Made by a program: the position numbers and the translations under genes
The notes under the pieces: model-generated
Seen by the model: only the letters and a program-made list of their open reading frames with translations
Told to the model about the DNA's origin: nothing
Database searches by the model: none
Shown here: one piece after another, positions 3,201-63,802 of the stretch
How positions within the stretch are numbered: the first letter of the stretch is position 1
Layout: the number at the start of each line of letters is the position of its first letter
NCBI RefSeq assembly: GCF_947568905.1
Contig: NC_079164.1
Location: 83,948,001 to 84,012,000, forward strand
Length of the DNA stretch: 64,000 nt
Direction of reading: 5' to 3'
Origin: Ostrea edulis
Lineage: Eukaryota

Positions 3201-6200
3201 AGAACATTTGACATTTTTATCATAGCGAATTTGACAAAACATACATATGAATTTCTATTGTTAAGGTTTTATATGTGTCCAGCAAAATTCAAATAGTCTT
3301 ACAAAACTCGTAGCATCCATGCGGCCACCTTACTTTTCAGAGGTTCATCTAAGAAATTTTAAAGGACAAGTGACCATTTCTGAAGACAAAGAAACCTACA
3401 TGTATTTTAGGGGGCATCTTAAAGTACTGATAAAGCAATGTCACTAAAGCACTATTATTCATTTATTCACCAAAACACTACTGGTTAATAGATTTATTTT
3501 TTTTTTTACATGAATATACATTCTATGTAACAGCAGATCTCTGGGGGAATAAATTGCAATATAAAATAAAGCTATAGATCCAATCTATTATTTAAAAAAA
3601 CCTTCGATTTACAGCACAGTTTTTCTGTGAATGATCGAGGTCTTACATCACTTTATTTATGCTTCGCCATCTCTAAATTTTAATATGAAAAAATTGCTAA
3701 CATATCTTCCTACTTCATGTTTTGAGTTCATTGCAATCTCTGCACTTTATAAAACATTTCAAATGCAGTGTGTATCTTCAATATTTTTGTATGATCCTCT
3801 TAAATTTACATCAAGTGACTGTATCTCATTTCCTTTCTCAATGACCAAGTAGCATGTGAGTGGCAGGGTGGTGAGATTCTATCATCATTGAAAGCAAGTT
3901 TTTTTTTCCACTTGACTTGATGATCAAGCAGTCTAATGTGCTGGTCAAACTCTGCTAGGAGATTTGATAAATATACAAACATAAACACATATATTTAGCA
4001 TAACAATTCACATGTAGACATAAAGATATATTCAAAATTTATGTCATTTATAGTGAGCACAGAATGAATAAGCTTTGTGCTGGCTGGTACTGCAAGGTCT
4101 AGTGACTATAGTGGGCAAAAAAGTCTGAACTGAAGTTGCACATTCATCTTAGTAGAAAACGTTTTAGTCACAATCCCAGATGCAGATCTCACAAAGTCAA
4201 ATCTCCTTGATCTCTGATTATGAACTTAGTTAATAAGATTATTTCAATATTTCATCCTAGTCTAGTGATCCCTTACACAAAGCAGTGTGCCGCGATAGGT
4301 CTAATGTATAACGTCTTCATTCCGACGTCATAATACAACTGGAGCAGTGACAGATTTGAATTAGGAGTTGAAGAGTGAGTTTAGCATACAGGCACACCAC
4401 AATGAAAGTCAACCTTGCAACTTACACTATGACAAGGAAATGCATTACTACATGTACATATATGTCTATGAAAACATTTGACATCAAATGATTGTGATCG
4501 ATTTGATTACTTCTAGGTTTGAAATGGACTTCAATGTATCATTGCAACAATGAAAAAAAATAGGGGGGGGGGGGTGTCAAACATGTAAAAATTTATTTAC
4601 TATACTATACAAATGCTGAAATATTTAATTATGGTGATAAATTAAAATACATTATTGCTACATGGAGGTTATTAGATAAATTTTCAGGATAATCACTGCC
4701 TTGCTATTAAATATAAACTTTTGATGATTCTTTATTATCCTGTTGTGTGATTTTCAATAGCGTACAATTTTTTTCCACTTTTTTAAAATCAAATATCTTA
4801 ATTCCAATGGAAGAGGCTATGTCAGGGATGCATATACAGGGGATGGAAGGTACAAACCCACCATCCCTGGGCTAGGTAGAAAATAAATATATTTGCCTAT
4901 TATTAAGCACTTCCAGTTGTACAAGATTGCTACATGTAGTCAAATGCCCTCCAACACCACAAAAAAAGTTGAAGCATTAAAGTCCCATAACTCCTGTTAA
5001 ATTTGCTGAATCAAATTGGCAGCGTAATATGATTGACTACATATGGTGACTAACAATCCTACAAAATTTGAACACAGTCCGTTGAACTGTTTCCAAGGAG
5101 TTGCGTCCATAAAGTGTTCCTATAGTGTGGCATGTACAAATTCAACAAAGTTCCTTAACTCCTGTAAATTTGTCAAATCAAAATGGTGGCACAATATGAT
5201 CAACTACATATAATATATAGTAACTAACAATCCCACAAAATTTGAACATAATCTGTTGAGCGGTGTTGTAAGAATTGCTTCCACATAGTCAAGTGGGACG
5301 GACAGAGGGACACCAGTTTTTCTATGTCCCCTTCCACGATGCGGCGGGGGACAAAAATAAGAAATGTTGGTCCATAGTACTTATCAAATGAGACCCCTAA
5401 AAATGCATAGAATGGAACCCACTTCCATTGAGAAAATGTCTGGATCTGCTCGTATACATGTAGCTGGAAGTAGTAGCACTTGTTCTAACGGTAGCTCTGT
5501 CAACTTTTAAAGTATCATGGACAATGTAGAAAACACTGTAAAATTCAATGTACGTTTTCTAATTTTCTGGGTAGATGAGGATGCTCAATTTACTAGATGC
5601 CTCAGTGTATAGATTGATCACCACATCTACCCCAAAAACAAGACACCCATTCCTTAATTTAATGGCCTTAATTAATAATTGTGGTATACCCTGTCGTTGT
5701 TCTTGAATCTGCACCAATAACGACACCTCCATTGTATTCCACAGCCATAATAGTAGTCTATAAAAGAAATGAAAGAACAATGATTCTCATATTGACAATG
5801 AAACTCGCAAAAAAGATGCTACGACTAAAGTACTTTATTCAAACTTGAGCCGGGTCATATCAACATACAAACCCTTTCAACAGGTTGGGAACACTTCCTC
5901 TATAGCGAGATATTCTTGCATAAACGCGATTATCCCTCTTTAGCGAGAAAGTAAACATTACCATAAACAGGTGTTTTGGTCTCTTTATTGAAAATAATGG
6001 CAAATTCCGTGCAATGCTGAATAAGTGCGGCACACATTTGGCAAGATGCGATTTGTCTCTATAAAATTTATAACACAGTCAAGAAATTTCATATCAATGT
6101 TGCTGCGTAAGAGGGAAAGAGGCTGAAATCCAATGCACATAGTGAGTATTTTTGTTTTGATTAATATATTTGCAGAATAATCAGACATTTTAGCACTTTA

Positions 6201-8525: not shown

Positions 8526-10766
8526 CAGTGGCGGATCCAGGATTTCCAAGCACCTGGCCATGATTCACTAACAAATGAACATATTATTCACGGAGGTAAA
8601 ATTCTTACTCTCTGTCTTCTGAAAATGTTCAATGCAGTCATAGCCTGCGGTAATATTCCCCATGAATGAAAGCGCGGTTTAATAGTTCCATTATACAAAG
8701 GTGATGACAAATCGAAAGCCGCATGCAACAGTTATAGGCCTATATCTCTTTTGCCCTGCTTTTTTAAAATACTTGAGAAAATAATTCTCTCTCGTATCTC
8801 AAATTCAACTCTTGTATCAAAACATTTCCCAAATGCTCAACAACAAGGTTTTCAAAAATATCTAGGTTGTTTAACCGCATCGTTTAATTTACAAGAGACA
8901 ATTTTTCATAATATAGAACAAGGCAACGATGTCTATGTTAGCTTTTTGGATAGCAGTAAGGTTTTTGATACTGTTTGTAGGGATGACCTCATGTTAAAGC
9001 TTTACAAACTTGGAATAAAAGGTAAAACCTGGTCACTGATTAATAACTGTCACCAAGGAACATCTAGCTCTATTGTTGTAAATCAAACTCAATCTAGATG
9101 GTTCTCTGTTGATCAAGGTGTAAGACAAGGTGGTGTTTTGTCTACATTTTTATAACTTGTTTATATTAACGATCTTGTTGATGAATTAGAGCTAAGTAGT
9201 CCTAATACAGGTGTCCTTAATGTTATGAGCAGCTGTCCATCATTGGCAGATGATATATCTTGTATTGGATTATCCCCAATGGCCCTCCAAAATTTGTTAG
9301 ATATTACATACGCATATTGGAATAAGTGGCGATTTTCCTTCATTAATGCGTCAAAATTGTGCGTGGTGAAATTCCGTGGTAAGAAGAGTAAAATGGATAA
9401 CAACTTTCTTTGGCATCTGTGACAAGCATCGATTCCATGTGAAGAATCCTATAACCACCTAGGTATTGTGATTCATCAGAAATTCAAACTTTCTCAAAGA
9501 ATAGGCAGAGCCTGCGAAAAGGGCAGAAAATCCTTTTTTGCACTATCTGACATAGGATCCCATTTTCTCAACCCAATGACTGTATCTCATTTATATAAAA
9601 CAATCGTTATAGCTACAGTACTTTATGGATGCAAACTCTGGAATAATATGACCTTTCAGACCGCCAAAACCTTTGTATTTTTCAACATTTTGTGTGCAAA
9701 AAATCTCTGAATTTACCAAAATTATGCAGATCCGATATATGTGAGTCACTTTTTGATGTATTGCCCATCAGCGCAGAAGTAGATACAAGAAAACTACTGT
9801 TCTTAGGAAGGCTCTGTCGAATGGACATAAACACTCTACCAAAGAAAATATTCTTGGCCAGATTATTTTCTTACTGGCAAAAGCTTTCAGAAGTCCAATA
9901 TGGTTTTATTCCAGACATCATTCAAACCTTACAAACATACAATCTTACCAATTATACAAGTACATGGCTTGACAACGGATTCTTCCCCGAAAAGGTATCC
10001 TGGAAAAGGATATCCAGAAATACTGTATCATTGTATCACAAACTGCCACAATTTGGAAATTAGGTAACATTGAACTTTGCAAATTCATAAGCGAAATATA
10101 CACAGGTATGCATGTAAATGGCCTTGTTCATTTGTGTCATTTATGTGGTTTAATTCGTTCACGGATGTTTTCTGTCATTCGTCTTGTTTGTGTCCAAGTA
10201 CCGCCAGCATACGAGAACAGTGGTGGAACGCCATCGTTAATAACTTCAGTGTCGAACTGTGTGCAGAACACTGTGTGGGCTCTCGGAATTTGAATGGTAC
10301 CTTGTTCTTCTTGGTGGCCAAATATCTACACCTTAAACTCAGATGGATGCCATATCATTCCATCTGATGAACTTTAAATTGGTGCGCAGCACTTCAGCCC
10401 TATACTACAGATGCTCACTGCAGTAATTATATTATATCTATATTAAATATGCCTTGGTTTTAAAAGGGGCAGCTGCTACCATATGTACTCATCTATTGAG
10501 GTGTACAACTAAGAATATCCTATTCTTTTCTTTTTTCTTTTTTGGTTATATGTGTACATAGTGAGTTTTGTGTTGGGGGGGTGTTCCCCCCCCCTTTTTT
10601 TTTTCTTTGTATGTATTTGTAATTATATTGATGTAAATGTATTTTCTTTATAATCTGCTAAGGAAGGAAATAAAGTATGAATGATTGAAAGCTATATATG
10701 CTAGTAATGCCTTGTAAAATTTGTGGCGAAAGGGGAGGGGGGGGGGGGGCTCTAAATCCGCCACTG
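8526..10766. mobile_element. MITE (CAGTGGCGGAT termini) split by a LINE insertion
   Basis: TIR cagtggcggat at 8526 and atccgccactg ending at 10766. Confidence 0.65.
8548..10690 (+). pseudogene. 5'-truncated, decayed non-LTR retrotransposon (LINE ORF2 reverse transcriptase)
   Basis: KAPGHD..., YRPISLLPCFFKILEK, QQGFQK, FLDSSKVFDTV, QGVRQGGVLS and LADD (RT catalytic motif), broken by stops and frameshifts across ORFs 8751-10063. 3' end AATAAA plus (TGAA)n-like tail. Confidence 0.92.
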
Positions 10767-28643: not shown

Positions 28644-31600
28644 ATGATGGATGAAACAGAGGTTAGATGTCTGATGTGCTTACCAATGTTTGTTCACAGG
28701 AGTTTGAAATTTTATCAATAAAGCCGATAAAATCCATTTGATTATACTTATAGCTCATGGCTTGGTCAAACAAGTGAATTCTATTGACTCTATTGATAAA
28801 ATTTCAAACTCCTGTGGTTTGTTGAATTTGTTTGTAAAGTAATAGACTGAGTTCACACAATTTAGAAATTACTGTTGAAAGAGGAAGACATATTGGGGTT
28901 GAGCATAATAATAGAATTTGTAAACTGTGTGTAACAGGAAGGGAGAAAATGCAACGAACCAGACCGGGATTCGAACCCGGGCCCCCTGAATCTCTAGTCA
29001 GGTGCTCTACCACCGGCGATCGAACCCGGCTACATGTGCAATAGTAATAACATAGAAAATGAAACTCACTTCCTGTGGTTGTGCAAATGTTATGAACAAG
29101 AAAGAAAATCCCTATACAATAAATTATCAATGTTACATAACTTCGATTATAAGCTGATCAATGATGACAATATTAGGTAAAAATTATTATTGAATTCCAA
29201 GTCCTATAGTGTATTGAAATGTCTGTCTAAATTTATTGAAGATGTGTCTAATAAAAGAAATTTCCTTCAAGCAACTGATTCCAATATATCTACATAATTT
29301 ATTATGAGAAAATCCTAATTCTATGACTATTCTTAAATATGTACTATTATGACTCCATATACTATTCCTATATACAAGGTATACCTATTATGGTCCCTTT
29401 ATCTCATGTACACCTTATATGCAGTGTAATATATCATAATATGATTTTGTCTGGTGCCATATCAGTGATTTTTGAAGACCCATTTTAGGTCCGAATATCG
29501 GCCCTTTCCCCTTCCAAAAATTCCCAATTTAACTTGCACTTTTCCCAATAATAAAAACTGGCTAAAAACATACTCGTTAAAAAATAAGTTCAATGTGAAT
29601 AGTTTATGTATGGCATGACAAAGATGCATCAATTCTAGATGATTTAGAAAGAATGGTCGAAAATTTTAAGAGCGTAAAGAGAAGAAATTTAAATATGTAA
29701 AATAAAAGCAGAATGACATCAATTTGTGTTTAATTTCTTGTATGATATGATATATTTAGCGTATTTACAATAATGACTAGATTTTCCCAATTTGATCAAA
29801 ATGTTGACTATTTTTCCCAATTCGAAAGCCACAGGACCCTTTTGAAAAATGTTGAAAATTCACTGCATATTCATGCATTCAAATCACTGATTATATTTTG
29901 AATATTATTGTTTCTATGATATAATCTATAATAACTGCCTTTGCCAGTAATTGTTATTGTGCTTGTGCAAATAAAATCATTGTCATTAATCTAAGCGAGA
30001 TTCGTTGAGGCTGGATATTTCGACGATGAATCTCGATGAGATGTAAACATGATCAATAGCTCAGTATCATTCTTAAACTTAGCAGATGAGTACCATGCAA
30101 GCATGACACATGTCATTAGTCAGTAAACCAGTTCTTGTCACATATATTATACATGTATTTCTAATGATGGATATGTTACGACAGTTAGGTATCTAAAAGG
30201 CTTTTTAAAATATCTAAGCTCTAGTGGTACAATAAGATACTGACCCAGAAGCATACTAAGTACTCCACTTGCACGGAACGGTACAAAACGATCCTTGCAT
30301 GGAAACTGAACAGTCTGCACTGAATGGTAGCATTTGGGCCAGGGGTCTAACTCTGACACAGATAAAAAAAAAATACCCACTCACTTCAAATGTCTAAAAA
30401 AAAAATCAGAAACTAGGTGCGGTATGCATAATTTGCTGGTCTCCTTCCAAAGATTAATGTACTTGCTTGCCAAATTTCAAACCACAGGTTCTTTTAAGAA
30501 ATATTATACAGATATACATCATTGTACTCTCGATTTCACCTGCTTATCTTTACTAGGACATTTACCGGTCCAGGTCACTGGGTGGTTTCTTGCCTATGAC
30601 AGCAGCAAAATCTCACATCAAAATTACGAAATGTAATATGCTTTATGAAGTATGCTGGAATGAAGCATTGCATTTCATGTCCTCGTGTATTTTCAGAAAT
30701 GAAATTATTTCTTTCAAAGATGATTATCTTTAAAATCTTATTAGTTTTACTTTTGTTTGAAAATGAGGAACATTATTTTGTCTCAAAACAATATAGTAAT
30801 CAAATCTCACCCATAATGAGCAAGATCTCACCCTTTGTCTCATTGGATTGATCACATGTTTGGCAATGGGTGTCTTTTGAGTGTACGACTTGTGTGGTGT
30901 AGTAGTATCATATATTGATAATATATATATCAATTCATATATTAAATATCTGTGACAAGTACCTGTCATTAGGGATGTTAGTACATGTACAGTACATTGA
31001 GTACACCGCACTTTCGAAAATTCAAGCATCGTACATATAATTTATTACCAATTTACACTATATGTGTCATATTTGTACCACCCCAAATATTTTAAGTACA
31101 TTACATAAATCTTGAACTTGGGAGGTTTTCTTTTAAAATATGATGTTTTTTTATCACTTGAACATGTTGAAAATGAAACTCCTCAACCTCTCTTCATTCA
31201 CTCCCAAAAGTTCTATATTTCATGAATTTTTGACTACAAATACTAGTAAATTGTGCATAGAAGTCTATTAAGGTAGCGCAGTGGTTAAAGCATTGGGTTG
31301 GTGAATCGCCGATCTCGAGTTCAAATCCCTGAGAGTCTTTTATTCATATGTGTTGAAATAATTTTTTTGTATTTATCCAGATTTGTATATTGTTTGCCTT
31401 TTTGGCATAGGTACTTATTGTATATCATCATATCTTTTATAATTAAATCAATTCGTACTGATTTGAGAAACTATTTCTTGGTGTAGTGAGCCACCTTAAA
31501 AAAGGTTAGGGTTTAATTTATATTAAGATTAAAGATGTCTGAATTCAGAGTGTTGCAGTTGTGTCTCTTTATTTACAGGACTTAAGACAGGAAGTATATT

Positions 31601-34600
31601 CTTTAAAAAATAAGTTGGCAACAGCTACTAGCCAAGAGGCCTGGTACAATGAAGAGATTGCTCAACTTCAGACGATGAGGAAACAAGACTCAGATATACA
31701 GGAAATGTTGAAAGAGGAAGTCATCAGGTTACAAAGAAAGGTGAGTTTTGATACAGATAAAATTTAATGTTGTTGTGATGAAAGTTTCAGTGCACTGGAA
31801 AACTTTTACCCCAGTGGGCAGCTTCTAAACTGAGCAAATTTGAATTTACTCATTACCCTAATGTAGTAAATGGTTTAGAGGAAATTTTAAAGGGAAACAA
31901 AATTGTTTTTCAGTATGCCCAAGCAAAAATAACAGGGGTAGGTGTGTGTGTGAGTTGGGGAGGGGGTGTTTTCCTTGATATACAGTAATAGGCTACTTTA
32001 AAAACCACAGCTGAAGTTACAGTATACTGCTAATTTGAAATTTGAGTTATATGTAATGGCCTTCAGTAAGGGTCACTGACACTCTAAACCTTGAGAAAAA
32101 AGGGAAAGTTGTCAGATCAGCTTGTTTAGAAATGTCTGTTGTTTAACAGGTACAAAGTGTAAAGTTTTCCTTGAAATCACATGTACACGCTAAAATACAC
32201 AAAAAAAAAATGTACTTCCAACATGTCCAAATACTGTGTACCCGGTCAGACTCTGATTTATTATTTAAACTAAACATGCTAAAGCAAGCAAATTTTGACT
32301 AACAAAAAAACCCACTATGCATATAGTTGACTCAATGACTGCAAGTTGACAAAAATAATGAATATTATGATGTTAAATAGTGTTGAATAATCGGGAAAAT
32401 TTCATAATCGATAATCGGTCAAAATCGGAAGAACTAGATCGATCAATGATCGATATAATCGGTATTTACATATAGTTAATAAATGTTTATTATTTTTGGG
32501 TTATTTCCTTTTAGTTTTATGGATATGTGCAACATACACACATCTATTAGCTTATTTACGAGGAATGAAATGGGTTTTTTTTTTTAAGCCATGACATCCA
32601 GATTGGCTTTAGTTTAGTTTTAAGAAACCTTAAAGTTTTCAGACGTCCGACTTTGGTTTCCATGGGTAGGGATATATATCAAGTTATCAACTAATCCGAG
32701 ATTCCTCCTACTCTTACCCCGCTTTTATATCGTGACATGTGTGGGAGAGAGTCAGAGCGGACTCTATAATGAAAAGTGGGAATTCAGCGACACCAGCTAA
32801 TGTCGCTGCATTACCTACGTAATATAAAAGCGGGGATAAGAGTCGGGGGAATCTCGAATTATTTATCAACTTCATTATTATTGAGTTGATTTCAATATCC
32901 AGGACGACGACGATGATGATATCTAAAGCCTTCCTTTTCAATGTGTTGATTGATATATACATAGTTGATTTGTTTATAATGGGCTTGTGTTTGGGCGACA
33001 ATCGATTATGAAAAATGGAATCGATAATCGGAATCGACGAGACAAAAACGATAGACAATCGTTTCATCACTAATATTAAGTATGATAAGCTTGAAATTTT
33101 CAGATTAAAAACACATGTAACTGTTTGTGGGATTGTTTGGAGGGCATGGTGCTGTAAATGGGCCAGCTAATATTATTATACCCCCCGCAACAAGGTGGGG
33201 GGGGGGGGGGGTATACTGGAATCGGGTTGTCTGTCTGTCCGTCCGTCCGTCTGTAGACGCAATGGTTTCCGGGCACTAAAGCATTATCCTTTCCACCTAC
33301 CGTCACCATATCATATATATGGACTACCCATGGGATGAAGATGTTCCCTATCGATTTTGGGGTCAAAAGGTCAAAGGTCACGCGCACTGGACATCGAAGT
33401 AGCAATATGGTTTCCATTTAAATTCTTTAACGGCTTTTTCATCGCATGGAGATGCTGTGTTCCTAGATAATTCATTTCTCCCTACAAACGAGAATACCCA
33501 AGGTTTGTCATGCCATTTGTTTTTTACACTCAGAAAAGAGGTAGTTTATACCTATTACCAACACCCTTTGGGAGATTGGGGTAAGCGGGGGGTATTCTTA
33601 GTGATCATTGCTCACAGTACCTCTTGTTATAAATGAAATCTGATAGTGCACAGTAAGTAGGACTATATGATTCAAAGGTTATTATGATAATTCCTGTGTG
33701 TGATATACATTCAATAATCAACTCCAGATAGGGAATTTGGAAGAAGATATTGATCAGCGCAAGTCAACAGAGTCTAACTTGAAATCCCAGATTCAGTCTC
33801 TTGAGAAGTTAGCAGAGAGCAACAAAACTATAAATGAAACCTTGTCTCACAGCATAATGACGGAGGATAACTCACAGCTGATGAATGAACTGGGTTCTCT
33901 GCAGACTGAAAACGTAAGGACCGAATATTTATTACTTAAAAAACGGGTGGGAAAATCCACAATTACCAAACAGCTTTATGTGATATGTATCAATTGAACT
34001 GTAAGTACTGCCATTTTTTTATTGAATTTTTTATATAGTCAACATGCTTGAAATTGACATGTATGCCCAAAATTAACTCTTGATGGCAGCCACAGCAGAT
34101 TTAGATATGTAAATTTTAATAATTTGATGCTGCAAGTGATTTAAAACTTTAAACACAGAATAAGCGCCATGCAGTAACACTAAATCCGACAGGTAGTAAT
34201 AGACATCTGTCAACAATATCATAGTATTTGTGTTTTAGACAATAAATGATACCTGTAATTGTGTAATCTTTGTAGACCCAGCTAAAAGGTGAAATCATTG
34301 AAATTAGGCATGAACTACAAAGTGCAGCAATTGAACTGGAGAATGCGAAACAAAAGCTGGTACACAAGGACCGAGAGTTGGAGGAACTTCAGTGCCAAAT
34401 AACCACCTATGTCAACACTATAGAAGTATGCCTGGCATTTCTATTGTAGTGGTTTTATTGTTGATTTCTTTCTATCATTATAGTTTTGAAGTTTCAAAAA
34501 CCTAAATTTCTGGAAATATTTTTTTTTTCCTTTTAGAAATGTAGGACAGAAAACATTGAACTGAATACACAGATCGATGTTTTACAAATGGAATCTCAAA

Positions 34601-44696: not shown

Positions 44697-46092
44697 ACAC
44701 ATTCTACGTTCATATTGAAAACGCATTTAGAGGTTTTCAGCATCTTAGATGCAACGATGAAATTCCACAAGCTCTACGCATCATGCTGAATTAAACTATC
44801 TACACACTTGTCCAAATAGTTTAACAAACATCACCGATACAATCAGATGGTGTTAAACTCAAAACCTTTTAACCCTTTCTCGCTCAAGTATTTGCCCATC
44901 AAGTGGCTTGGAAAGCCACTGTGCGTAAACTGATGTTCGATCGAATGTTGAGTCTCAGACCAAGTTTCCCCAGGTGATACATGTATTTCACATCATTTAT
45001 CGATCATCTTCAATACTTATAAGTTATCACAAAATCTTGGCTCTGGGGATCAGTTGGTCACATCTTGAGCTTGCTTGCAGAGGAGGAATAGCCGCGCACT
45101 GACCTCTAACCGCCAGATAAAGGACAATCATATATATGTGCCTACATTTCTTCAGGACAATTTTAAAAATATTTAGGCTCTCTATCGATAGGTAGAACAA
45201 ATGTTGAACATACCTGTACAGACTAGATAAGATTTTCGGTGCATATTTAGCATTGGCATCTGATAACATGTGTAAAATTCGGCGTGGTAGGAACAACCGC
45301 TTTGTAAAACATTGTTTTCCAATCATTAAAACCATTTCAAACAGAAATAGACAACTATAAAAATAAAACACACTGCAAAACAAAGTTCGTGAAGGATTTT
45401 GAATTATTTGTTTACTTTTAGAGGCTATTGAGAATTTGTTTCCTCAATTTCTGAATGTTTTAAAACTAGCATTTTCAAGAAATTGATTACACTGAAATAC
45501 ACTAGATTAAATGGTCACTTCATAAAGATGCAGAAGGGCCATTGCATCGGTTCTAGTTGCATGAAAATGATGTGTCTGGTAACGGAATGGATGAAGTCCA
45601 ACAAAACGGTTTTACAATAGACAAATGTCTCGAAATTCGAAATGTCCATGTATACAACAAAACACGTCAGCAATTTTGGCCAATGAAAAGACCTATTTCC
45701 ACCAACTAGTATACATCACAAAAATATCCATGGTTTCGGATTATGTTATTCAAATAAAACATTCAATTAATGTTCTTATTTACTGGTCGAACGAATGGAA
45801 AAAAGTAAATTTTTGTTGCGGACCGGAAAATCTTAGTTAAACGATGCCCAAGAACAAGGTAGCCTGCAATAAAGCGTTTAAAATGTCACCTCGAGACCAA
45901 GGTATCACGTAGTAACACGCGTTCTTCATTTGTCAATTACTCATTACATCCATTTTGTGTTTTCTGGAAATGTTCGAATGTTGTTCTTGTAAATCGTACA
46001 CGTACCGGAGCGCTCTTTACCACTACAACCATATTTACCAAACTATATAAACCCCCAAATTCATACATAAAATTATCCTTGTATTTGTTGCC

Positions 46093-46206
46093 ATGGAAAC
46101 TTGGGTCCAGTATATGGTACAGGCAGTAGCCATAGTGGCTATCCTTCTGGATGCCGTGTATGGTCAATCCAGCGATGATCCAGCCTCCTGGGATGAATGG
46201 AACTAA
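46093..46206 (+). CDS. Small secreted peptide precursor A (37 aa): METWVQYMVQAVAIVAILLDAVYG-QSSDDPASWDEWN
   Basis: TATATAAA 46044-51, gccATG context, hydrophobic signal-like N-terminus ending VYG, AATAAA near 46385. Aligns with precursor B. Confidence 0.65.
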   Translation: METWVQYMVQAVAIVAILLDAVYGQSSDDPASWDEWN

Positions 46207-46701
46207 AGGTCAAGGTTTATTGTGGGCACAAAGGTGGGGGTGATTTTTAAAGTTGAAGATCGTAAATTCCAGCGATAGAGTTACTAACAATGGTAATGGC
46301 GGTGCAGGTTTGCTTTCCTTACTGTGCATTTCTAAAAATATATCAAGTTATCGTTCAACAAGTTTGATACTCACGAGGCATTTTAATAAAACATTTCTAA
46401 GAAATCCGAATTCACCGTGAGCGGTAACCCTATATTTGGGCGATTTATCGACAGCCAGACATAAAGACCGTGAAACAACAAAACATGCAACATAAAAGGA
46501 ACTTCCTAAACTATGACACAAACTGTTTCCGCGTTATTTCAAATATTCTTGTTTAACAACTTCCCAAAACATCCTACGTAGTACGTTTTTTACGTTGTTT
46601 TGAACCGTGTGAGACTATATAAGCTAAACTCCGACTGTTGGTCTTCACTCAACGTTCAAACGCAGAGTCCTCCACTTCAAGTAGTAACTATAGCAACAAA
46701 G

Positions 46702-46851
46702 ATGGAGTCAGTCCGCCAATATATCTACCAGGCCGCTACCTTTGCCATGGTGGTCATGCTTCAAGCGGCGTTTGCCCAGTACCAAGATGACAACAACGGT
46801 GGCGATTTCTTGTACGGTCCATACCGCTACATCAACAGATATGGTTACTAA
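46702..46851 (+). CDS. Small secreted peptide precursor B (49 aa): MESVRQYIYQAATFAMVVMLQAAFA-QYQDDNNGGDFLYGPYRYINRYGY
   Basis: TATATAA 46616-22, aagATGg context, signal-like segment ending AFA, Tyr/Gly/Asp-rich mature part. Paralogous to A. Confidence 0.7.
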   Translation: MESVRQYIYQAATFAMVVMLQAAFAQYQDDNNGGDFLYGPYRYINRYGY

Positions 46852-47502
46852 GGTAAACGCGTTTCGAAACTTTGGTATGACGTCACTATTTCTCACCGCT
46901 GTCTCCTAAATACATTTTGCTAAATTACATTGGAGGATATTTTCTCTCTCTCTAAATTTTTGTTGTTTAAAAGTTAAATCCAAAATTAAGTTTTAAAATT
47001 TATTTCTTATAATTTGAATAGCAAGAGGGAAAAAAATCAATACGGTTGACAATATTATTTATAAAAGACTAGCGATACTCCTAGCAAACGACAATTTTCC
47101 TTATGACTGTTCTGGGTTTTTAATCGCATTATTTAAGGGCCAGGTCTTGTTCATGCACCGGATATCAATCATAAATCCACAATTTCCTTTTGATCTAGTT
47201 TATTTAACAGAAAAGGTACCAAACTCATACCAGAAACACGCGTTTAAAATCAGAATTGTCGCGTTTTTTGACGAAAAACATGGAAAAAAACCCAACACAA
47301 CAAATTTGCTTTCTTTTGAAATTTATGAAAAACTATTCAATTTACACACCGCAGATTTGTAAAGTAGAACGGACATTTCCTGGAAATCATTCTTTCATCA
47401 AAATTTCCATATAAAAACTCGTCAGTATCGTGAATGTTTGCACAGTGCCAAAGATACATATACTAAAGTGTGCGCAAGAGATTTTGGTGATAGTGAAACG
47501 CC

Positions 47503-47854
47503 ATGTTCAGACCCCTGCTCATATTTGCTCTGTGCCTGGCTTTTGTGGTTTTAACATCAGGCTTATCATTAGACGAGGGAGCTTACTACATGGGGAGGAA
47601 TGAAAACGGTCGGCATTTCGTTCTCTAGTTAGAATAGTTCATACAAATTATCTGTCGATTAATTTCTAAAAGACGGAGCATTGAATTTTATTTTTTAGAC
47701 TTTATAATAACGTTTACTATGTTGTAACAATTACTTCAATATATTTCTAAAAGTATTGAACTCTACCATGTCTTTAGTGTAGCTTGTTTTATTTTCAGGA
47801 TATGACGATTGTTATTGGGCCGGTGACGAATGGACATGTGGTAATGGATACTAG
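47503..47854 (+). CDS. Small secreted peptide precursor C (53 aa if spliced): MFRPLLIFALCLAFVVLTSG-LSLDEGAYYMGRNENGYDDCYWAGDEWTCGNGY
   Basis: TATAAAA 47410-16, gccATG, classic signal peptide. Exon 47503-47608 (donor AACG|gtcggc) joins exon 47799-47854 (acceptor tttattttcag) in phase 1. AATAAA near 47968. Unspliced it would be 41 aa ending at 47628. Confidence 0.65.
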
Positions 47855-48655
47855 TCAACAAATTAGAACCATCTCATCTTGTAGTACCAAATTCCGGACA
47901 TCAATCAGAAAATACATGTTGGCAACCAAATATTTTGTTGTATGCATTCAAATTGTATCTCGTGGTCAATAAACAATCGTTGCTTCCTATCACTTGTATT
48001 TGTTTGGGTTTTGTTTTCAAGTTATTCTATTGAATAATCGAACGGACAGGAGACAAGTTATTTCACCTTACTAGCTCCTACCCCAACATTTCATAATTTG
48101 GAAATATGATTGGGGTCGTGATATATGATATTGGTAAAAGTTTTCGATTAAACTCGAGATGTCTCGAAAAATGGTATTCATTTGCCGTTTAATGGATATC
48201 AAGTTGAGTTTACATGTATTGACATTATACTCTAGCTGTTCCTGACTGCTAAGTAAAGTAGGAGATGCTTGGGTTTTCTAAAAGTATATTACTTTGCTAC
48301 AAGGAATGTGCACATTCTGTATACACATGGAGTCACAAAGTTTTTACGTGGAATTCAAAAAGATGAAATTTCGTTTCTAAATGGAATAGATTTTCATGGA
48401 GAGGTAAAATCATGCCCATAAAACCGCATAACCGCGAAGATGGTTGTAGCCGCTGACGCACTAATATTTCAGTACTTGTTGGTACCATTTTTTGGGAGGT
48501 ATCTTTTTCATAGGTCCAATCTTGTTAAAAAAACCTAAAAGCTAATTAAATTCATATTTTAATATGTTATAAAAATATCTCAAAGAAACTGCAACATTGT
48601 TCATAAGCACATCAGTCATGTACAGTATATACAAAATGTACCGTAGTGAATGATC

Positions 48656-51600
48656 TTAAAAAGCGTCTACATTTTTATGCGAAATTTTGGCCCTTTTTAA
48701 GAGAGATCTGAACGCTCTGGGCACACTGCAGTGGACTGAGAAACTCCTGCCATCTAGAAATTCTGGAATCATGATGAATTTGGCGTGGATGTACATTGGC
48801 AGGTTGCGAGTCTTGCTCTGTCTGATTCCAAGTCGTCTGACTACGTCACTAGGGAGAATCTGCGGATGTAAAACACAGGGTTTAAGAGACAATTATCAAT
48901 GGTATGTGGTATTACCTCTTTTCTTGAGTTTTTTGTTGGTCAATCATGTACTTGTGCTTTACAGGCCGTTGTATGTATCGTGTAACTAATAAATGTATTT
49001 GTTTTCTAACTTTATATATATTTCTTTCTAATAAAACTATCTTGGGATTGCCAATTTGTCATAATGAAAAAGTTCGAAACTTTATTAAATATTAGTATGA
49101 AAATTATTTTGAAATTTGTCAGAGAACAAAATTCGGACCATATAGTTTCAAATATTACGTAACAGATGTTTAAATAGTACCTGTATTTTTCAATTTGGGG
49201 TTCAAAATGCATTGTACTATTATTCGATAATAATAAACTAGTCACCTGCGGTTTGATTTCACTCAGGTAGGAATATTTGTGGTCTCCCAACACCGGGGTT
49301 TTCAGCACATGAAGGAGATGTGTTCGTATCTGATGTTTCACACCTATTAAAACATGTATACAGAAACTATTTCATATGTTTTGTGGGATATTCTGAAAGT
49401 AAAGTGCTGGGAAAATATTTACTGTAATAGAAACAATAAAAAGACAAATATCCCTCACATTCAAGTAAATTAAACATGCATGGTCTATGAAAACATTGGG
49501 AGAAATATACTGTACATTCACTACATGTACCTATACATACATAGCTTACAACAACAAATAGGACCACGGGTCATAACGCCCGCCAGACTTTCAGCCAGGT
49601 TTCTTACCGAAGTGCTTTAATCGGCATCGCAAAATGTCAACCATTGTAGTAAGCATGATTGATTGATTGTATATTGTTTAACGTCCCTCTCGAGAATTTT
49701 TCACTCACATGGAGACGTCACCACTGCCGGTGAAGAGCTGCAAAATTTAGGCACAGGGAGGGATCTTGATCGTGCCAAACCTGCTGTGACACGTGACCTC
49801 GGTTTTTATGGTCTCATCAGAAGGACCACCCCATTTAGTTGTCTCATACGACAAGCAAGGGGTACTGAGGACCTATTCTAACCCAGATCCTCACAATTAT
49901 GAGAGTTCGTGTATATTACTAGTGAATTTCACACACTGCAGATTTGTTGATGTTGAAAAGAAAATATAAGAAACTTTTCTACAACCTACTGGGGATGGTT
50001 GTCGGGATTTTCTCCGGCTTACACAGTTATGACCTCCTTATATAAACAAAACCAGATAGAGGACTCCTATTGGAAATAAGTTCTAAAGAGTTTTTACAGG
50101 TTACATGTATCCCAGCTAGCATTTACTATCTAAGCCGAATAAAGATTTATTTTACTCGGAGAACATGCATATTTCATTGTAAAGTATCTGGGTCTTACTG
50201 TTGTGTGTCACGCGAATTAAACCCCGGATATTTTTGCTTGAAAATACAATGGAGTCTACAGTCGCACTACACAGTGATGCTTCAGATAGGTAAACCATAC
50301 AAAATTTCTTTGTAATGTATATATCAATATATATTATGGGTAGCAATAAAGATCTATTGGATGGTTTGTGTGAATTGCATACAAAATACATGTATATAAA
50401 AATTGTACATAATGCATTTATCACTTTTAACACACATCGGTGCACGTACGTTGTATCGAATATTTCAATGACACAAAACAATCTGCTTATTGTTTCAATG
50501 GTTTGACAGTATCCACACAATGCTACATTTATACGCTGTATTAAGCAATATAATAACAATGGAACAATGTATATATTATATTGAACTGAATTTGAACGTT
50601 CCTAAATTTCCTACAAACGGAGACAAGAGAGTGGGACAAGTAGGATCGCCAGCTTATTGGGCGGTATACATTTTCGATGGACATTATAAATTCTCCACAT
50701 CGAGGACCTATTGCTATAGTATTACCACGAACAGTTCTAGACAAAAAAGCGGTCACTTTATGGTAGACAGTGGGCATCATATTGCAGAGGCAAGCAGCCA
50801 TGCCATCACTTCGGATACTCAAGAAGTGGTACCACAAACAGACAGTCTGGTGATATTGAACATACAGAATCTGGTGAAAATTTACGACGTAGGATCCGGT
50901 AGTGACGTCGGCGAGATTCACGCGCAGTATCTCCTCGACAACGTACTGACGGGCACCAGAAAATCCTTACAGACAAATCTAGCTCGTAATGACAGAAGTG
51001 ATTGGAGGGATGGAACAAATACGTTCCAAAACTTACAGGCTAGATGTCAATATTTTGTTTTCGTAAAATACACCGCCATTTTCTTTATCATGTTTTAACA
51101 ATTCAGTAATTTAACATAAGGATTTCATTTCATTTTCAGATTTCCGCAGGCGTTGGAGAATTTAAGAGTGAAAAGGCAATCGTTGGAACCCTAGAGTGAG
51201 AAAACAATGCAATAATGCACTTATTATTTTGTTCCTATCCGGATTTATTTTATATTTTGCTTTAGCATACAAGAAAAGTTTACTTTCTACTTTTATATAA
51301 CAGGAATATTCAATGGACAAATCGAGTGGAGGAAATCGACACGAAGATTTCTTTTCTATCATCAGTGGTGAGAGAATGAAATATGTTTGTTTTCACATTT
51401 TTATTTTCTTCTTCTGATAAATGCACTTGGATTAACCTTAGGCAAACGGAAAAAAGTCAAACTCAAAGGTCATGAGATCAAAAAATTTTGGTATTAGAAG
51501 AAAGGTCTTGTCACTGGAATATCACCATCCATTCAAACGTTATGATCAAAGGTAATTTCTTAGGAACAAATAGACAAACGACTAACAAAACACTATGCTC

Positions 51601-62199: not shown

Positions 62200-62680
62200 T
62201 GCGTTTCATGACATTCAACAGCTGTTCAACAACTAACTAAACCACTAGAACTTATCACCTTCAACATATTGTAATTCCTAAATAGCACAAAGATTGGCTA
62301 AATATCAAAATAAACCGTTTGAACCTCTAGAAATGAAAAATTCCTGCGAGTTTGTCGGTGCTTTTTTTTTCTTTCTTTTCTGTCAACGACATGTCTACTC
62401 TATGGAGGCTGCCATATTGAAAATCTTGTTAACTCGATCGGGAAGGTATAATTTTATTTTTCAAATCTAAACAGTTAAAAATAAAAATAATCCCCTCTAA
62501 AAGATAGAAAATGACAATGAGATGATTATGAAATTTTTTATAACAAGATTATGATGATCAGAACCGTGGATGTCTAACAAGTTTACACTATACCGAATGA
62601 ATAAAGTACGAATTAATAATAAAATCTACTTTCACTTTGGACGCTTGTGTGCATTCGTGTGTATACATTTGAATGACAAT
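62200..62680. promoter_or_regulatory. Putative bidirectional promoter RPUSD4/FANCL
   Basis: Only about 480 bp between divergent start codons; YY1-like gctgccatattg near 62409. Confidence 0.55.
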
Positions 62681-63802
62681 ATGGAGGAAAACAGACGAAA
62701 TATGTTGTTGAAGTTCCCGTGCTTAGTTCCAAAAAACCTTGACTTTACTGAGTATGATGGATACATTCAAGTTTTGGATCAGGAATATAGAATGAACATC
62801 AAATTACCAAAAGATGGAAGACTACGAGATGCGAAATTAACATGTGATTGGAAATTAGAACAGATTTTGAAAAAGTATGAAAAAATTGTAACACAGAGAT
62901 TAGCTCAATGTGGAAATCTTCCAGCTTTCTTGGAGGAGCTGAGAAGTATTGCAGAGAGGCAACTTAGTTCCCAAGATCAATGTAAATCAACAGCATTTAG
63001 TAGCAATTGTGCACAACTGATATCAGAACTAGAAAATATTGGATGGGAAAAAGTGGTTTCTGTTGATGCAGATTTTCAATCATTCCAAATCAAGTACACA
63101 GATGCAAAGCAGAGACAGCATATAATGAAAATCAAGCTCCATCCTCAAAATTCAAGGCATGCTCCTACGATTGCAGTAGATCTTCCTGCCGAGTTTGATG
63201 TTGTTTGGACACCCTCTTCTACACTTCTAGATGTATTCAATCAGTTTGTTCATAATGTTGATCTTTATCAAGAATTATGGAATAATTTGGATGAATTGGA
63301 CCAGAAAACATGGATTCTAGAACCAGATAATCCCACGTTTGCTGCCACTAATAGAAGAATTGCCTTAAGTGCGAGCGCATCTGTACAAGTAACTGTAGAT
63401 CCCAAACATCCGCATAGCTTACCAGAAATCAAATTCCTGGGGTCAGATAAGGCAACCAATCCTTTGCGGGAAAACATGACAACTAATCTGGCTTTGTGGA
63501 ATGAAAATGATAGCCTCCTTAAAAATGTATCCACTGTATTAGATGTTACATTTCCTTCTCCTTCAGACTCCAGGAAGGAGGATTTTAGTGCAGATTGTGG
63601 AATATGTTACTCCTACAGGCTAGGAATGGAAATTCCTGAGGAGGTGTGTAATGATTCTCGTTGTGGCCAGCCCTTCCATCAGACCTGTTTGATTGAGTGG
63701 TTACGAGGACTTCCTGCATGTAGACAGAGCTTTAACACTATATTTGGGGAGTGTCCATATTGTGGAACTCCCATTACTGTAAAAATGTTGATTAAGAAAT
63801 GA
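62681..63802 (+). CDS. FANCL: E3 ubiquitin-protein ligase FANCL, single uninterrupted ORF of about 373 aa
   Basis: ELF/DRWD-like regions (ELENIGWEKV, LDELDQKTWILEP..PTFAATNRRIAL) and C-terminal RING-variant CGICYSY..C..CGQPFHQTCLIEWL..GECPYC. Likely start is Met 62681 (MEENRRNML) inside ORF 62570-63802. Confidence 0.93.
   Translation: MEENRRNMLLKFPCLVPKNLDFTEYDGYIQVLDQEYRMNIKLPKDGRLRDAKLTCDWKLEQILKKYEKIVTQRLAQCGNLPAFLEELRSIAERQLSSQDQCKSTAFSSNCAQLISELENIGWEKVVSVDADFQSFQIKYTDAKQRQHIMKIKLHPQNSRHAPTIAVDLPAEFDVVWTPSSTLLDVFNQFVHNVDLYQELWNNLDELDQKTWILEPDNPTFAATNRRIALSASASVQVTVDPKHPHSLPEIKFLGSDKATNPLRENMTTNLALWNENDSLLKNVSTVLDVTFPSPSDSRKEDFSADCGICYSYRLGMEIPEEVCNDSRCGQPFHQTCLIEWLRGLPACRQSFNTIFGECPYCGTPITVKMLIKK

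What the first reader, a model, noticed from the sequence alone, without database searches (positions are those of the whole stretch)
46044..47973. Tandem cluster of three tiny secreted-peptide genes (acidic, Tyr/Trp-rich)
Seen: within 2 kb, three same-strand ATGs (46093, 46702, 47503) each follow a TATA box and open with a 20-25-aa hydrophobic signal-like segment. The short mature parts are QSSDDPASWDEWN, QYQDDNNGGDFLYGPYRYINRYGY and LSLDEGAYYMGRNENGYDDCYWAGDEWTCGNGY. None is called as such in the ORF track: A and C are under its length cut-off and B is buried in a longer ORF. Known: bivalve shell-matrix, periostracum and adhesive proteins are often short, secreted and Asp/Gly/Tyr-rich (Tyr can become DOPA), and N-terminal Gln is often cyclised to pyroglutamate in secreted peptides. 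Inference: this is a co-regulated secreted-peptide locus for biomineralisation, adhesion, defence or chemical signalling that standard annotation would miss.
Basis: partly seen in the sequence, partly recalled or inferred. Interest (0 to 1): 0.85.

Follow-up and report, generated by a model that had tools for sequence, protein, structure and literature searches.

The report
Oyster three-promoter secreted micro-peptide locus
Three tiny, unannotated oyster genes for secretion-type peptides are real and conserved across oyster genera, and at least two of them are alternative first exons that share one last exon, but what the peptides do is still unknown.

Summary
ATGs at 46093, 46702 and 47503 each lie 49-93 nt after a TATA box and open with a signal-like segment. 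A crude filter finds only one other such ORF in the 64-kb window.

All three ORFs are intact at the syntenic place (after Spindly, before a convergent RPUSD4-like exon) in at least four other oyster lineages, including Magallana gigas. TATA boxes, stop positions, the phase-1 intron of C and the poly(A) signal are all kept.

B shows a clear coding signature: dN/dS 0.03 against M. gigas, with 1/4/21 differences by codon position. A and C evolve faster, and within M. gigas diversity is lower in exons and promoters than in introns.

New here: the stops of A and B are followed at once by an invariant GT donor. One Logan contig joins B's exon exactly to C's exon 2 and ends after the shared AATAAA. 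So B and C are alternative first exons with one last exon. That exon is coding only for C. A probably does the same but is untested.

No match in Pfam, NCBIfam, Rfam, PDB or papers, and no relatives outside oysters. Function is inferred only: small acidic, aromatic-rich secreted peptides.

First readers of this scan noted the same stretch before. Other alternative-first-exon genes were reported elsewhere in this genome.

The parts
45773..46092 (+). Conserved proximal promoter and 5'UTR of A, with TATA box at 46044-46050
   Evidence: Aligns to M. gigas contigs at 66-67% over a distance where synonymous sites are saturated. It is 82.7% identical to the closer relative L014, against 51-61% in spacers. 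The TATATAA is present in all four taxa scanned (window, L005, L014, L016) and is also visible upstream of A in L017.
46093..46206 (+). First exon A coding sequence (37 aa): predicted signal 1-24, mature QSSDDPASWDEWN, stop TAA at 46204-46206
   Evidence: The ORF is intact in 5 oyster lineages, with in-frame length change only. dN/dS is 0.08-0.45 over long distances and about 1 in one close pair.
46209..46210 (+). GT donor 2 nt after the A stop (TAAAG|GT)
   Evidence: TAAAGGT is invariant in all lineages. The donor reads GTAA in four lineages and the weaker GTCA in the window. Its use is inferred, not shown.
46455..46701 (+). Conserved promoter and 5'UTR of B, with TATA box at 46616-46622
   Evidence: blastn blocks against M. 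gigas. 85.5% identical to L014. The 5'UTR block TCTTCACTCAACGTTC is conserved.
46702..46851 (+). First exon B coding sequence (49 aa): predicted signal 1-25, 24-aa Tyr/Gly-rich mature peptide
   Evidence: dN/dS 0.03 against M. gigas, with codon-position differences 1/4/21. 78-88% amino-acid identity to the window's B in the other oyster lineages.
46853..47798 (+). Intron removed from B transcripts (donor TAAG|GTAAAC, acceptor TTTTCAG|G). It contains the promoter and first exon of C.
   Evidence: The orthologous junction is seen in the spliced M. gigas-type contig L018, where L005 4909 is joined to L005 5976. There is no AATAAA or ATTAAA between the B stop and C in the window (read).
47213..47502 (+). 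Conserved promoter and 5'UTR of C, with TATA box at 47410-47416
   Evidence: blastn block 47213-47380 against M. gigas. 79.3% identical to L014. TATAAAA is present in all four taxa scanned (window, L005, L014, L016).
47503..47608 (+). First exon C: signal peptide plus the start of the mature peptide; phase-1 donor at 47609
   Evidence: Frame, phase and GT donor are kept in five lineages (the window, M. gigas, L016, L024/L026 and L025). The intron right after the donor is full of indels within M. gigas.
47799..47854 (+). Coding part of the shared last exon. It encodes the disulfide-loop peptide C-Y-W-[AT]-G-D-E-W-[TK]-C-G-x-G-x for C transcripts, with stop TAG at 47852-47854. It is 3'UTR for B transcripts.
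   Evidence: 83.8% nucleotide identity to M. gigas, the best-conserved block. Zero segregating sites among 14 M. gigas contigs. Both Cys and both Trp are invariant. It is joined to B's exon in L018.
47855..47992 (+). Shared 3'UTR with poly(A) signal AATAAA at 47968-47973; cleavage site about 47990 by analogy
   Evidence: GGTCAATAAACAATC lies 94-116 nt after the stop in every lineage. Transcript contig L018 ends about 19 nt after it and then turns into A's.

Best explanation
The stretch 45.8-48.0 kb is one compact, oyster-specific transcription unit. It has three TATA-box promoters, each driving its own first exon (A, B, C), and each first exon starts with its own ATG and secretory signal peptide. 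Exon C reads through a phase-1 intron into a short last exon that encodes a Trp/Tyr-rich disulfide loop. Exons A and B end their reading frames 1-2 nt before their splice donors. For them the same last exon serves only as 3'UTR and poly(A) site. This is shown for B by one spliced transcript contig and inferred for A. The products are three different 13-33-residue peptides that are acidic and rich in aromatic, Gly and Asn residues. They are predicted to enter the ER, lose the signal peptide (mostly exposing an N-terminal Gln that can cyclise) and be secreted without further dibasic processing or amidation. B is under strong purifying selection, which suggests a fixed molecular partner. A and C evolve fast in sequence but keep their frame, stop, splice sites and promoters. 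Function is inferred only. My order of likelihood is extracellular signalling peptide, then extracellular-matrix or shell-associated Tyr-rich peptide, then immune effector.
For: Synteny and intact ORFs, TATA boxes, stops, donors, intron phase and poly(A) signal in M. gigas and three further oyster lineages. Coding signature: B has dN/dS 0.03 with 21 of 26 differences at third positions; pooled dN/dS is 0.18 at dS of about 1; other pairs are. Within M. gigas, diversity is 0.000-0.0095 in coding exons and 0.007-0.012 in promoters, against 0.019-0.039 in introns and spacers. Spliced contig L018 joins B's exon exactly at AAG|GT...AG| to C's exon 2 and ends after AATAAA. Signal-like N-termini have 9-14-residue hydrophobic cores and small residues at -3/-1 in all orthologues. 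Neighbours: Spindly lies upstream on the same strand, and an RPUSD4-like exon lies downstream on the opposite strand, so the unit is not part of the downstream gene.
Against: There is no transcript for A or for the C exon1-exon2 junction. The spliced C proteins of three species are not in the protein collection, though that collection also lacks plain genomic ORFs of this size, so the absence is weak evidence. Only one transcript contig was found; it is chimeric at its 5' end and its library type is unknown. SignalP could not be run, and no peptide has been observed. The A/B leader is unusually well conserved for a signal peptide and lacks a clear positive N-region. The window's A donor is the weaker GTCAAG, and an AATAAA lies 180 nt after the A stop, so A may end on its own. 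In one close pair, A and C exon 1 give dN/dS of about 1-1.9 on very few changes.
Confidence: 0.68

Rival explanations
1. A and B are not cleaved secreted peptides. They are single-pass membrane micropeptides whose conserved N-terminal helix is a signal anchor, with a short acidic tail outside the membrane.
For: The leader is as conserved as, or more conserved than, the tail. B's residues 1-25 are almost invariant in 5 lineages, and A's leader is more conserved than its tail. M1, E2, Q6, Q10 and A11 are invariant between the paralogues A and B, and D20/Q21 falls on the same helical face. The N-region has no net positive charge.
Against: The uninterrupted hydrophobic core is only 9-10 residues, bounded by Gln and Asp/Gln. 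That length fits signal peptides and is too short for a membrane span. Small residues at -3/-1 are kept in every orthologue, even where neighbours change (AFA, AIA, VYG).
Confidence: 0.12
2. These are three independent tandem genes, each with its own 3' end. The B-to-exon-2 junction would then be a rare read-through splice.
For: Each has its own conserved TATA promoter. An AATAAA lies about 180 nt after the A stop in the window, and near the same place in some M. gigas contigs.
Against: The window has no AATAAA or ATTAAA between the B stop and C. The donor right after the stop is invariant in all lineages for both A and B, while sequence just beyond it decays. The only transcript found uses it. 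The A-side AATAAA is polymorphic (AATACA) in M. gigas contigs L009 and L020.
Confidence: 0.1
3. The conserved blocks are regulatory DNA or a non-coding RNA, and the short ORFs are not translated.
For: Promoter blocks are more conserved than the A and C coding parts in the O. edulis-L014 pair. No peptide evidence exists. A and C give dN/dS near or above 1 in one close pair.
Against: B shows the third-position pattern 1/4/21. Length changes are in frame only, and stops are fixed before the donors in 5 lineages. The Cys and Trp of the loop are invariant, with synonymous changes around them. There is no Rfam match.
Confidence: 0.07

Closest known systems
Variable-first-exon loci (clustered protocadherins, UGT1A; from my own knowledge)
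   Same: Several first exons, each behind its own promoter, are spliced to one common downstream exon. Downstream promoters sit inside the introns of upstream isoforms.
   Different: In those loci the constant exons are coding for every isoform and the variable exons are paralogous domains. Here the shared exon is coding for only one isoform and is pure 3'UTR for at least one other. The first exon C is also unrelated to A and B.
Minimal 'signal plus peptide' precursors such as Drosophila sex peptide (two-exon gene, Trp-rich, C-terminal disulfide loop; from memory, a lead only)
   Same: A precursor of about 50-55 residues with no pro-region or dibasic sites. The mature peptide is aromatic-rich and ends in a single disulfide loop (C).
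   Different: There is no sequence similarity. Loop size and charge differ, and the taxon is unrelated. Reproductive expression has not been tested here.
Gly/Tyr-rich bivalve shell-matrix proteins (Prismalin-14, shematrins, KRMPs; from my own knowledge)
   Same: Mature B combines an Asp-rich start with a Tyr/Gly/Arg-rich tail (28-30% aromatic). It is secreted and lineage-specific.
   Different: B is only 23-25 residues, has no repeats and shows no detectable homology. Those families come from pearl oysters and are 10-40 kDa. No shell proteome evidence exists.
Nematode NLP/CNC Gly/Tyr-rich antimicrobial peptide clusters
   Same: Clustered tiny secreted Gly/Tyr-rich peptides. The language-model neighbours of B include a nematode-specific peptide family and cuticle proteins, but at non-significant scores (0.65-0.79).
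   Different: Those peptides are cationic. A, B and C are net acidic, at -1 to -6. There is no homology.
Bivalve neuropeptide precursors
   Same: A signal peptide, a predicted N-terminal pyroGlu, and a single disulfide loop in C.
   Different: There are no dibasic cleavage sites, no C-terminal Gly amidation signal and no repeated peptide copies. The peptide strings appear in no paper.

Membership tests
Cleavable-signal secretory precursor | N-terminal hydrophobic core of about 7-15 residues | tested here: met
   Cores are 9 residues (A), 10 (B) and 14-20 (C), with mean Kyte-Doolittle hydropathy over the best 9-residue stretch of 2.4-3.5, in O. edulis and M. gigas.
Cleavable-signal secretory precursor | Small uncharged residues at -3 and -1 of a cleavage site soon after the core | tested here: met
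   VYG|Q or VYG|H for A, AFA|Q or AIA|F for B, and TSG|L or AAG|F for C, in all orthologues.
Cleavable-signal secretory precursor | Positive call by a trained predictor (SignalP/Phobius) or experimental secretion | not testable with these tools
   No such predictor is available here.
Neuropeptide/prohormone precursor | Mono- or dibasic convertase sites flanking the peptide, often with a C-terminal Gly for amidation | tested here: not met
   There is no KR, RR or KK in any orthologue, and the peptides end in Y, F, N, S or Q directly before the stop.
Cationic antimicrobial peptide | Net positive charge of the mature peptide | tested here: not met
   Net charge is -1 to -6 for all mature forms.
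Shell-matrix protein | Presence in a shell proteome, or mantle-specific expression | not testable with these tools
   No expression or proteome data are reachable. The peptide strings are absent from searchable papers.
Variable-first-exon transcription unit | Different first exons with their own promoters joined to the same downstream exon in mature RNA | tested here: inconclusive
   Met for B by transcript contig L018. Met for C only by conserved phase, GT/AG sites and reading frame. For A only the invariant donor is seen.
Any curated protein or RNA family (Pfam, NCBIfam, Rfam, PDB sequences) | Significant profile match | tested here: not met
   Zero families in Pfam, NCBIfam and Rfam, and only chance-level PDB hits.

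The most novel reading that the evidence does not exclude
One oyster-specific locus makes three unrelated secreted peptides purely by promoter choice. A last exon serves as coding sequence for one product and as 3'UTR for the others. The peptides form an undescribed extracellular signalling system (hormone- or pheromone-like, for example in reproduction, settlement or mantle control), with B as the conserved ligand and A and C as fast-evolving partners.
Probability: 0.25. Interest if true: 0.78.

Novelty: new variant of a known kind. Interest (0 to 1): 0.6.

Why it matters
Oysters are major aquaculture and reef-building animals, yet their peptide signals and small matrix components are poorly catalogued, because gene finders drop ORFs under about 50-100 codons. 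This locus gives three concrete, conserved, synthesisable peptides of 13-33 residues. They can be searched for in existing RNA-seq and mass-spectrometry data and tested in bioassays. It also shows an unusual gene layout: the stop codon lies against the splice donor, and a shared last exon is coding in one isoform only. Annotation pipelines would mislabel such transcripts as lncRNA or fuse them to a neighbour, as the UniRef M. gigas model does.

Tried and rejected
- **Within-species test:** same-species Logan contigs L001-L003 are 99.6-99.9% identical to the window, too similar for a polymorphism test.
- **Exact look-ups:** I looked up the spliced C proteins of O. edulis, M. gigas (two alleles) and L016. 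I also looked up a hypothetical B-loop fusion made through the upstream G|GTTAC donor. None is in the collection. This is uninformative, because the 41-aa genomic read-through ORF of C is missing too.
- **Word-based search with C:** no candidates.
- **Exhaustive profile search:** the A/B alignment was run against 1.84 billion representatives and found only oyster clusters.
- **Further contigs for the A orthologues** (P0005, P0006, P0015): all genomic.
- **P0014 and P0003:** not retrievable as loci.
- **P0017:** this 292-aa NCBI protein is listed in the P0012 cluster but is unrelated by eye; I treated it as clustering noise.
- **Family and literature searches:** Pfam, NCBIfam, Rfam, PDB, the ESM-Atlas look-alike search, and paper searches for the peptide strings, the run accessions and oyster micropeptides gave nothing usable.
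- **Shared promoter motifs:** among A, B and C only short words recur, such as CTGGAAAT near -125 in A and C. I did not judge this significant.
- **Repeats:** repeat and transposon origin is rejected. There are no other copies in the window and only chance-size repeats.
Full report
**What is in the window**

- A is 46093-46206 (37 aa).
- B is 46702-46851 (49 aa). It is hidden inside a TTG-started 83-aa ORF in the mechanical ORF list.
- C is exon 1 47503-47608 plus exon 2 47799-47854 (53 aa), separated by a 190-nt phase-1 GT/AG intron. AATAAA is at 47968-47973.
- TATA boxes lie 49, 86 and 93 nt upstream of the three ATGs.

A crude signal-peptide filter asked for a hydrophobic 9-mer plus small residues at -3/-1. 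It passes 32 of the 513 ATG ORFs of at least 30 aa in the window. Only 5 of those also have a TATA box at -35 to -110, and 4 of the 5 are A (two in-frame starts), B and C. The cluster is therefore well beyond chance.

A and B are paralogues in their first 30 residues: ME..(x3)..Q[YF]xxQA ... Q xx DD, with E about 1e-4 in a pairwise search. C is unrelated to them. There is no repeat or transposon signature and there are no other copies in the window.

**Which genome**

Earlier notes of this scan call the genome flat oyster, Ostrea edulis. I did not verify that independently. Exact copies of A and B occur only on 2-5-kb genomic Logan contigs that are 99.6-99.9% identical to the window.

**Conservation**

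A search with B found 86-88% identical peptides. Their contigs L004-L013 are syntenic with the window. Spindly exons lie upstream, and conserved blocks fall on each of the three promoter-plus-exon units, on C's exon 2 and on a downstream exon.

This second species is Magallana gigas. A UniRef entry of that species ends with exactly the A tail found on these contigs.

Three further lineages were recovered:
- L014/L015, about 78% identical to the window.
- L016, about 88% identical to M. gigas.
- L017 and L024-L033, plus a sister form, L025.

The following are kept in every lineage where the contig reaches:
- the TATA boxes;
- the ATGs;
- the A and B stop codons, each followed at once by a GT donor (TAAAG|GT and TAAG|GTAA);
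- the phase-1 donor and the acceptor of C;
- the TAG stop;
- the block GGTCAATAAACAATC 94-116 nt after that stop.

**Coding signature**

Against M. gigas, B has 1, 4 and 21 differences at codon positions 1, 2 and 3, giving dN/dS 0.03 at a saturated dS. A gives 0.28 and C gives 0.35. Other pairs give 0-0.4 for B, 0.08-1.0 for A and 0.3-1.9 for C exon 1. The high values rest on 6-7 changes in one close pair. Length changes are in frame.

Among 14 M. gigas contigs, nucleotide diversity is 0.005-0.0095 in the A, B and C exon-1 coding parts and zero in C's exon 2. It is 0.007-0.012 in the promoters and 0.019-0.039 in introns and spacers. The contigs were chosen by exact B or A protein, which biases non-synonymous counts for that gene only.

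In the O. edulis-L014 pair the promoters (79-86% identity) are as conserved as B (85%). They are more conserved than A and C exon 1 (74-75%), while spacers fall to 51-61%.

In short, B is a strongly constrained peptide. A and C keep their structure and regulation but change sequence quickly. In C the constrained part is the loop C-Y-W-[AT]-G-D-E-W-[TK]-C-G-x-G-x.

**Gene structure**

The invariant donor right after the A and B stops suggested splicing, as did the absence of any AATAAA or ATTAAA between B and C in the window.

One variant of B in the collection (P0008) sits on contig L018. There, B's exon (L005 4772-4909) is joined directly to L005 5974-6146, which is C's exon 2 plus 3'UTR. The join is at the canonical AAG|GT...AG| borders. 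The contig ends about 19 nt after AATAAA, where it departs from the genome into A's.

Upstream, the same contig carries an intron-less 653-aa EF-hand ORF in antisense and replaces B's first codons. It is therefore a chimeric cDNA assembly. A chimera cannot, however, explain an exact intron removal.

B and C are thus alternative first exons of one unit. In the window the B intron is predicted to be 46853-47798. Because the stop lies 1 nt before the junction, nonsense-mediated decay should not be triggered; this is an inference from the general 50-55-nt rule.

For A I have only the invariant donor. The window's own A donor is the weaker GTCAAG. An AATAAA lies 180 nt after the A stop, but the matching site is polymorphic in M. 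gigas. A's 3' end is therefore open.

The UniRef model joins Spindly exon 1 (window 31573-31746) to an AG inside the A exon. This hints at RNA evidence over A, but it may be an annotation artefact.

The downstream conserved exon (48656-48892) reads on the minus strand, so the unit is not a 5' part of that gene.

**Likely working**

What is shown is conserved promoters, conserved coding sequences and one spliced, polyadenylated B transcript. The rest is inferred.

The short hydrophobic cores (9-10 residues in A and B) and the conserved -3/-1 residues fit cleaved signals better than membrane anchors.

Cleavage would leave peptides with these properties:
- 13-16 residues (A), 23-25 (B) and 33-34 (C);
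- net charge -1 to -6;
- 12-30% Tyr/Trp/Phe;
- no convertase or amidation signals.

N-terminal Gln is predicted in four of five lineages for A, and in all but L014 for B.

TATA-driven promoters and lineage restriction fit tissue-specific secreted products. I rank the functions as follows:
- signalling peptide, about 35%;
- Tyr-rich matrix or shell-associated peptide, about 30%;
- immune effector, about 15%;
- uncleaved membrane micropeptide, about 12%;
- not translated, about 7%.

None of these was testable here.

**Comparison with known systems**

There is no match in Pfam, NCBIfam, Rfam or PDB sequences. No paper contains the peptide strings. An exhaustive profile search of 1.84 billion representative proteins found no relatives beyond oyster clusters. 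That library rests on ORF calls from short contigs, so absence elsewhere is weak evidence. Language-model neighbours of B are small secreted cuticle-like proteins, at scores that shuffled sequences also reach.

The layout resembles variable-first-exon loci. It differs in that the shared exon is non-coding for at least one isoform. Earlier follow-ups of this scan reported alternative first exons in a tubulin gene and a neuroligin gene of the same genome. First readers had already noted A/B paralogy and the two-exon gene C on this same stretch.

**Verdict**

This is an undescribed, oyster-restricted peptide locus with an unusual architecture. It is real and worth bench follow-up, but its function is open.

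Noticed in passing
L018:3-1961 (minus strand), Logan SRR21047125: The transcript contig that proves B splicing is chimeric. Its first 2 kb carry an intron-less 653-aa multi-EF-hand ORF (EF-hand_7, EFCAB10_C) in antisense, fused at B's codons 5-8.
   Followed up: partly
window 31573-31746 (+) and 46120-46206: UniRef A0A8W8K5B2_MAGGI (86 aa) joins Spindly exon 1 to an AG acceptor inside the A exon, in A's reading frame. It is either a real read-through isoform or a gene-builder artefact caused by RNA coverage over A.
   Followed up: partly
window 46840-46854; M. gigas L005 about 4897-4911: B's exon holds a second, weak phase-1 donor (G|GTTAC) 9 nt before the one that is used. Splicing from it to the shared exon would fuse B in frame to the disulfide-loop peptide. 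In O. edulis the fusion would even keep the same Gly-Tyr. No such product was found in the collection.
   Followed up: partly
window 62570-63802 (+): An uninterrupted 410-aa ORF has all four FANCL domains (FANCL_d1, d2, d3 and FANCL_C/RING). It looks like an intron-less FANCL gene.
   Followed up: partly
window 16792-17589, 16287-16407 and 17665-17875: A 154-nt satellite (5.2 copies) is flanked on both sides by 21-nt tandem arrays with the unit GTCGTGCGAACGAGATAATAA.
   Followed up: no
window 20967-21590: A 48-nt tandem repeat (13 copies) gives long open frames on both strands (HEHHTCTKAPCNTALN-type repeats). It is probably a minisatellite and not a gene.
   Followed up: no
window 19036-19656 (+) and 8751-9155 (+): Transposon remnants: a Tc3-type transposase HTH domain and a reverse-transcriptase fragment.
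   Followed up: partly
protein cluster of P0012: A 292-aa NCBI protein (P0017) is listed as a member of the 90%-identity cluster of the 37-aa A orthologue, although it shows no visible similarity. It is probably a clustering error in the collection.
   Followed up: no
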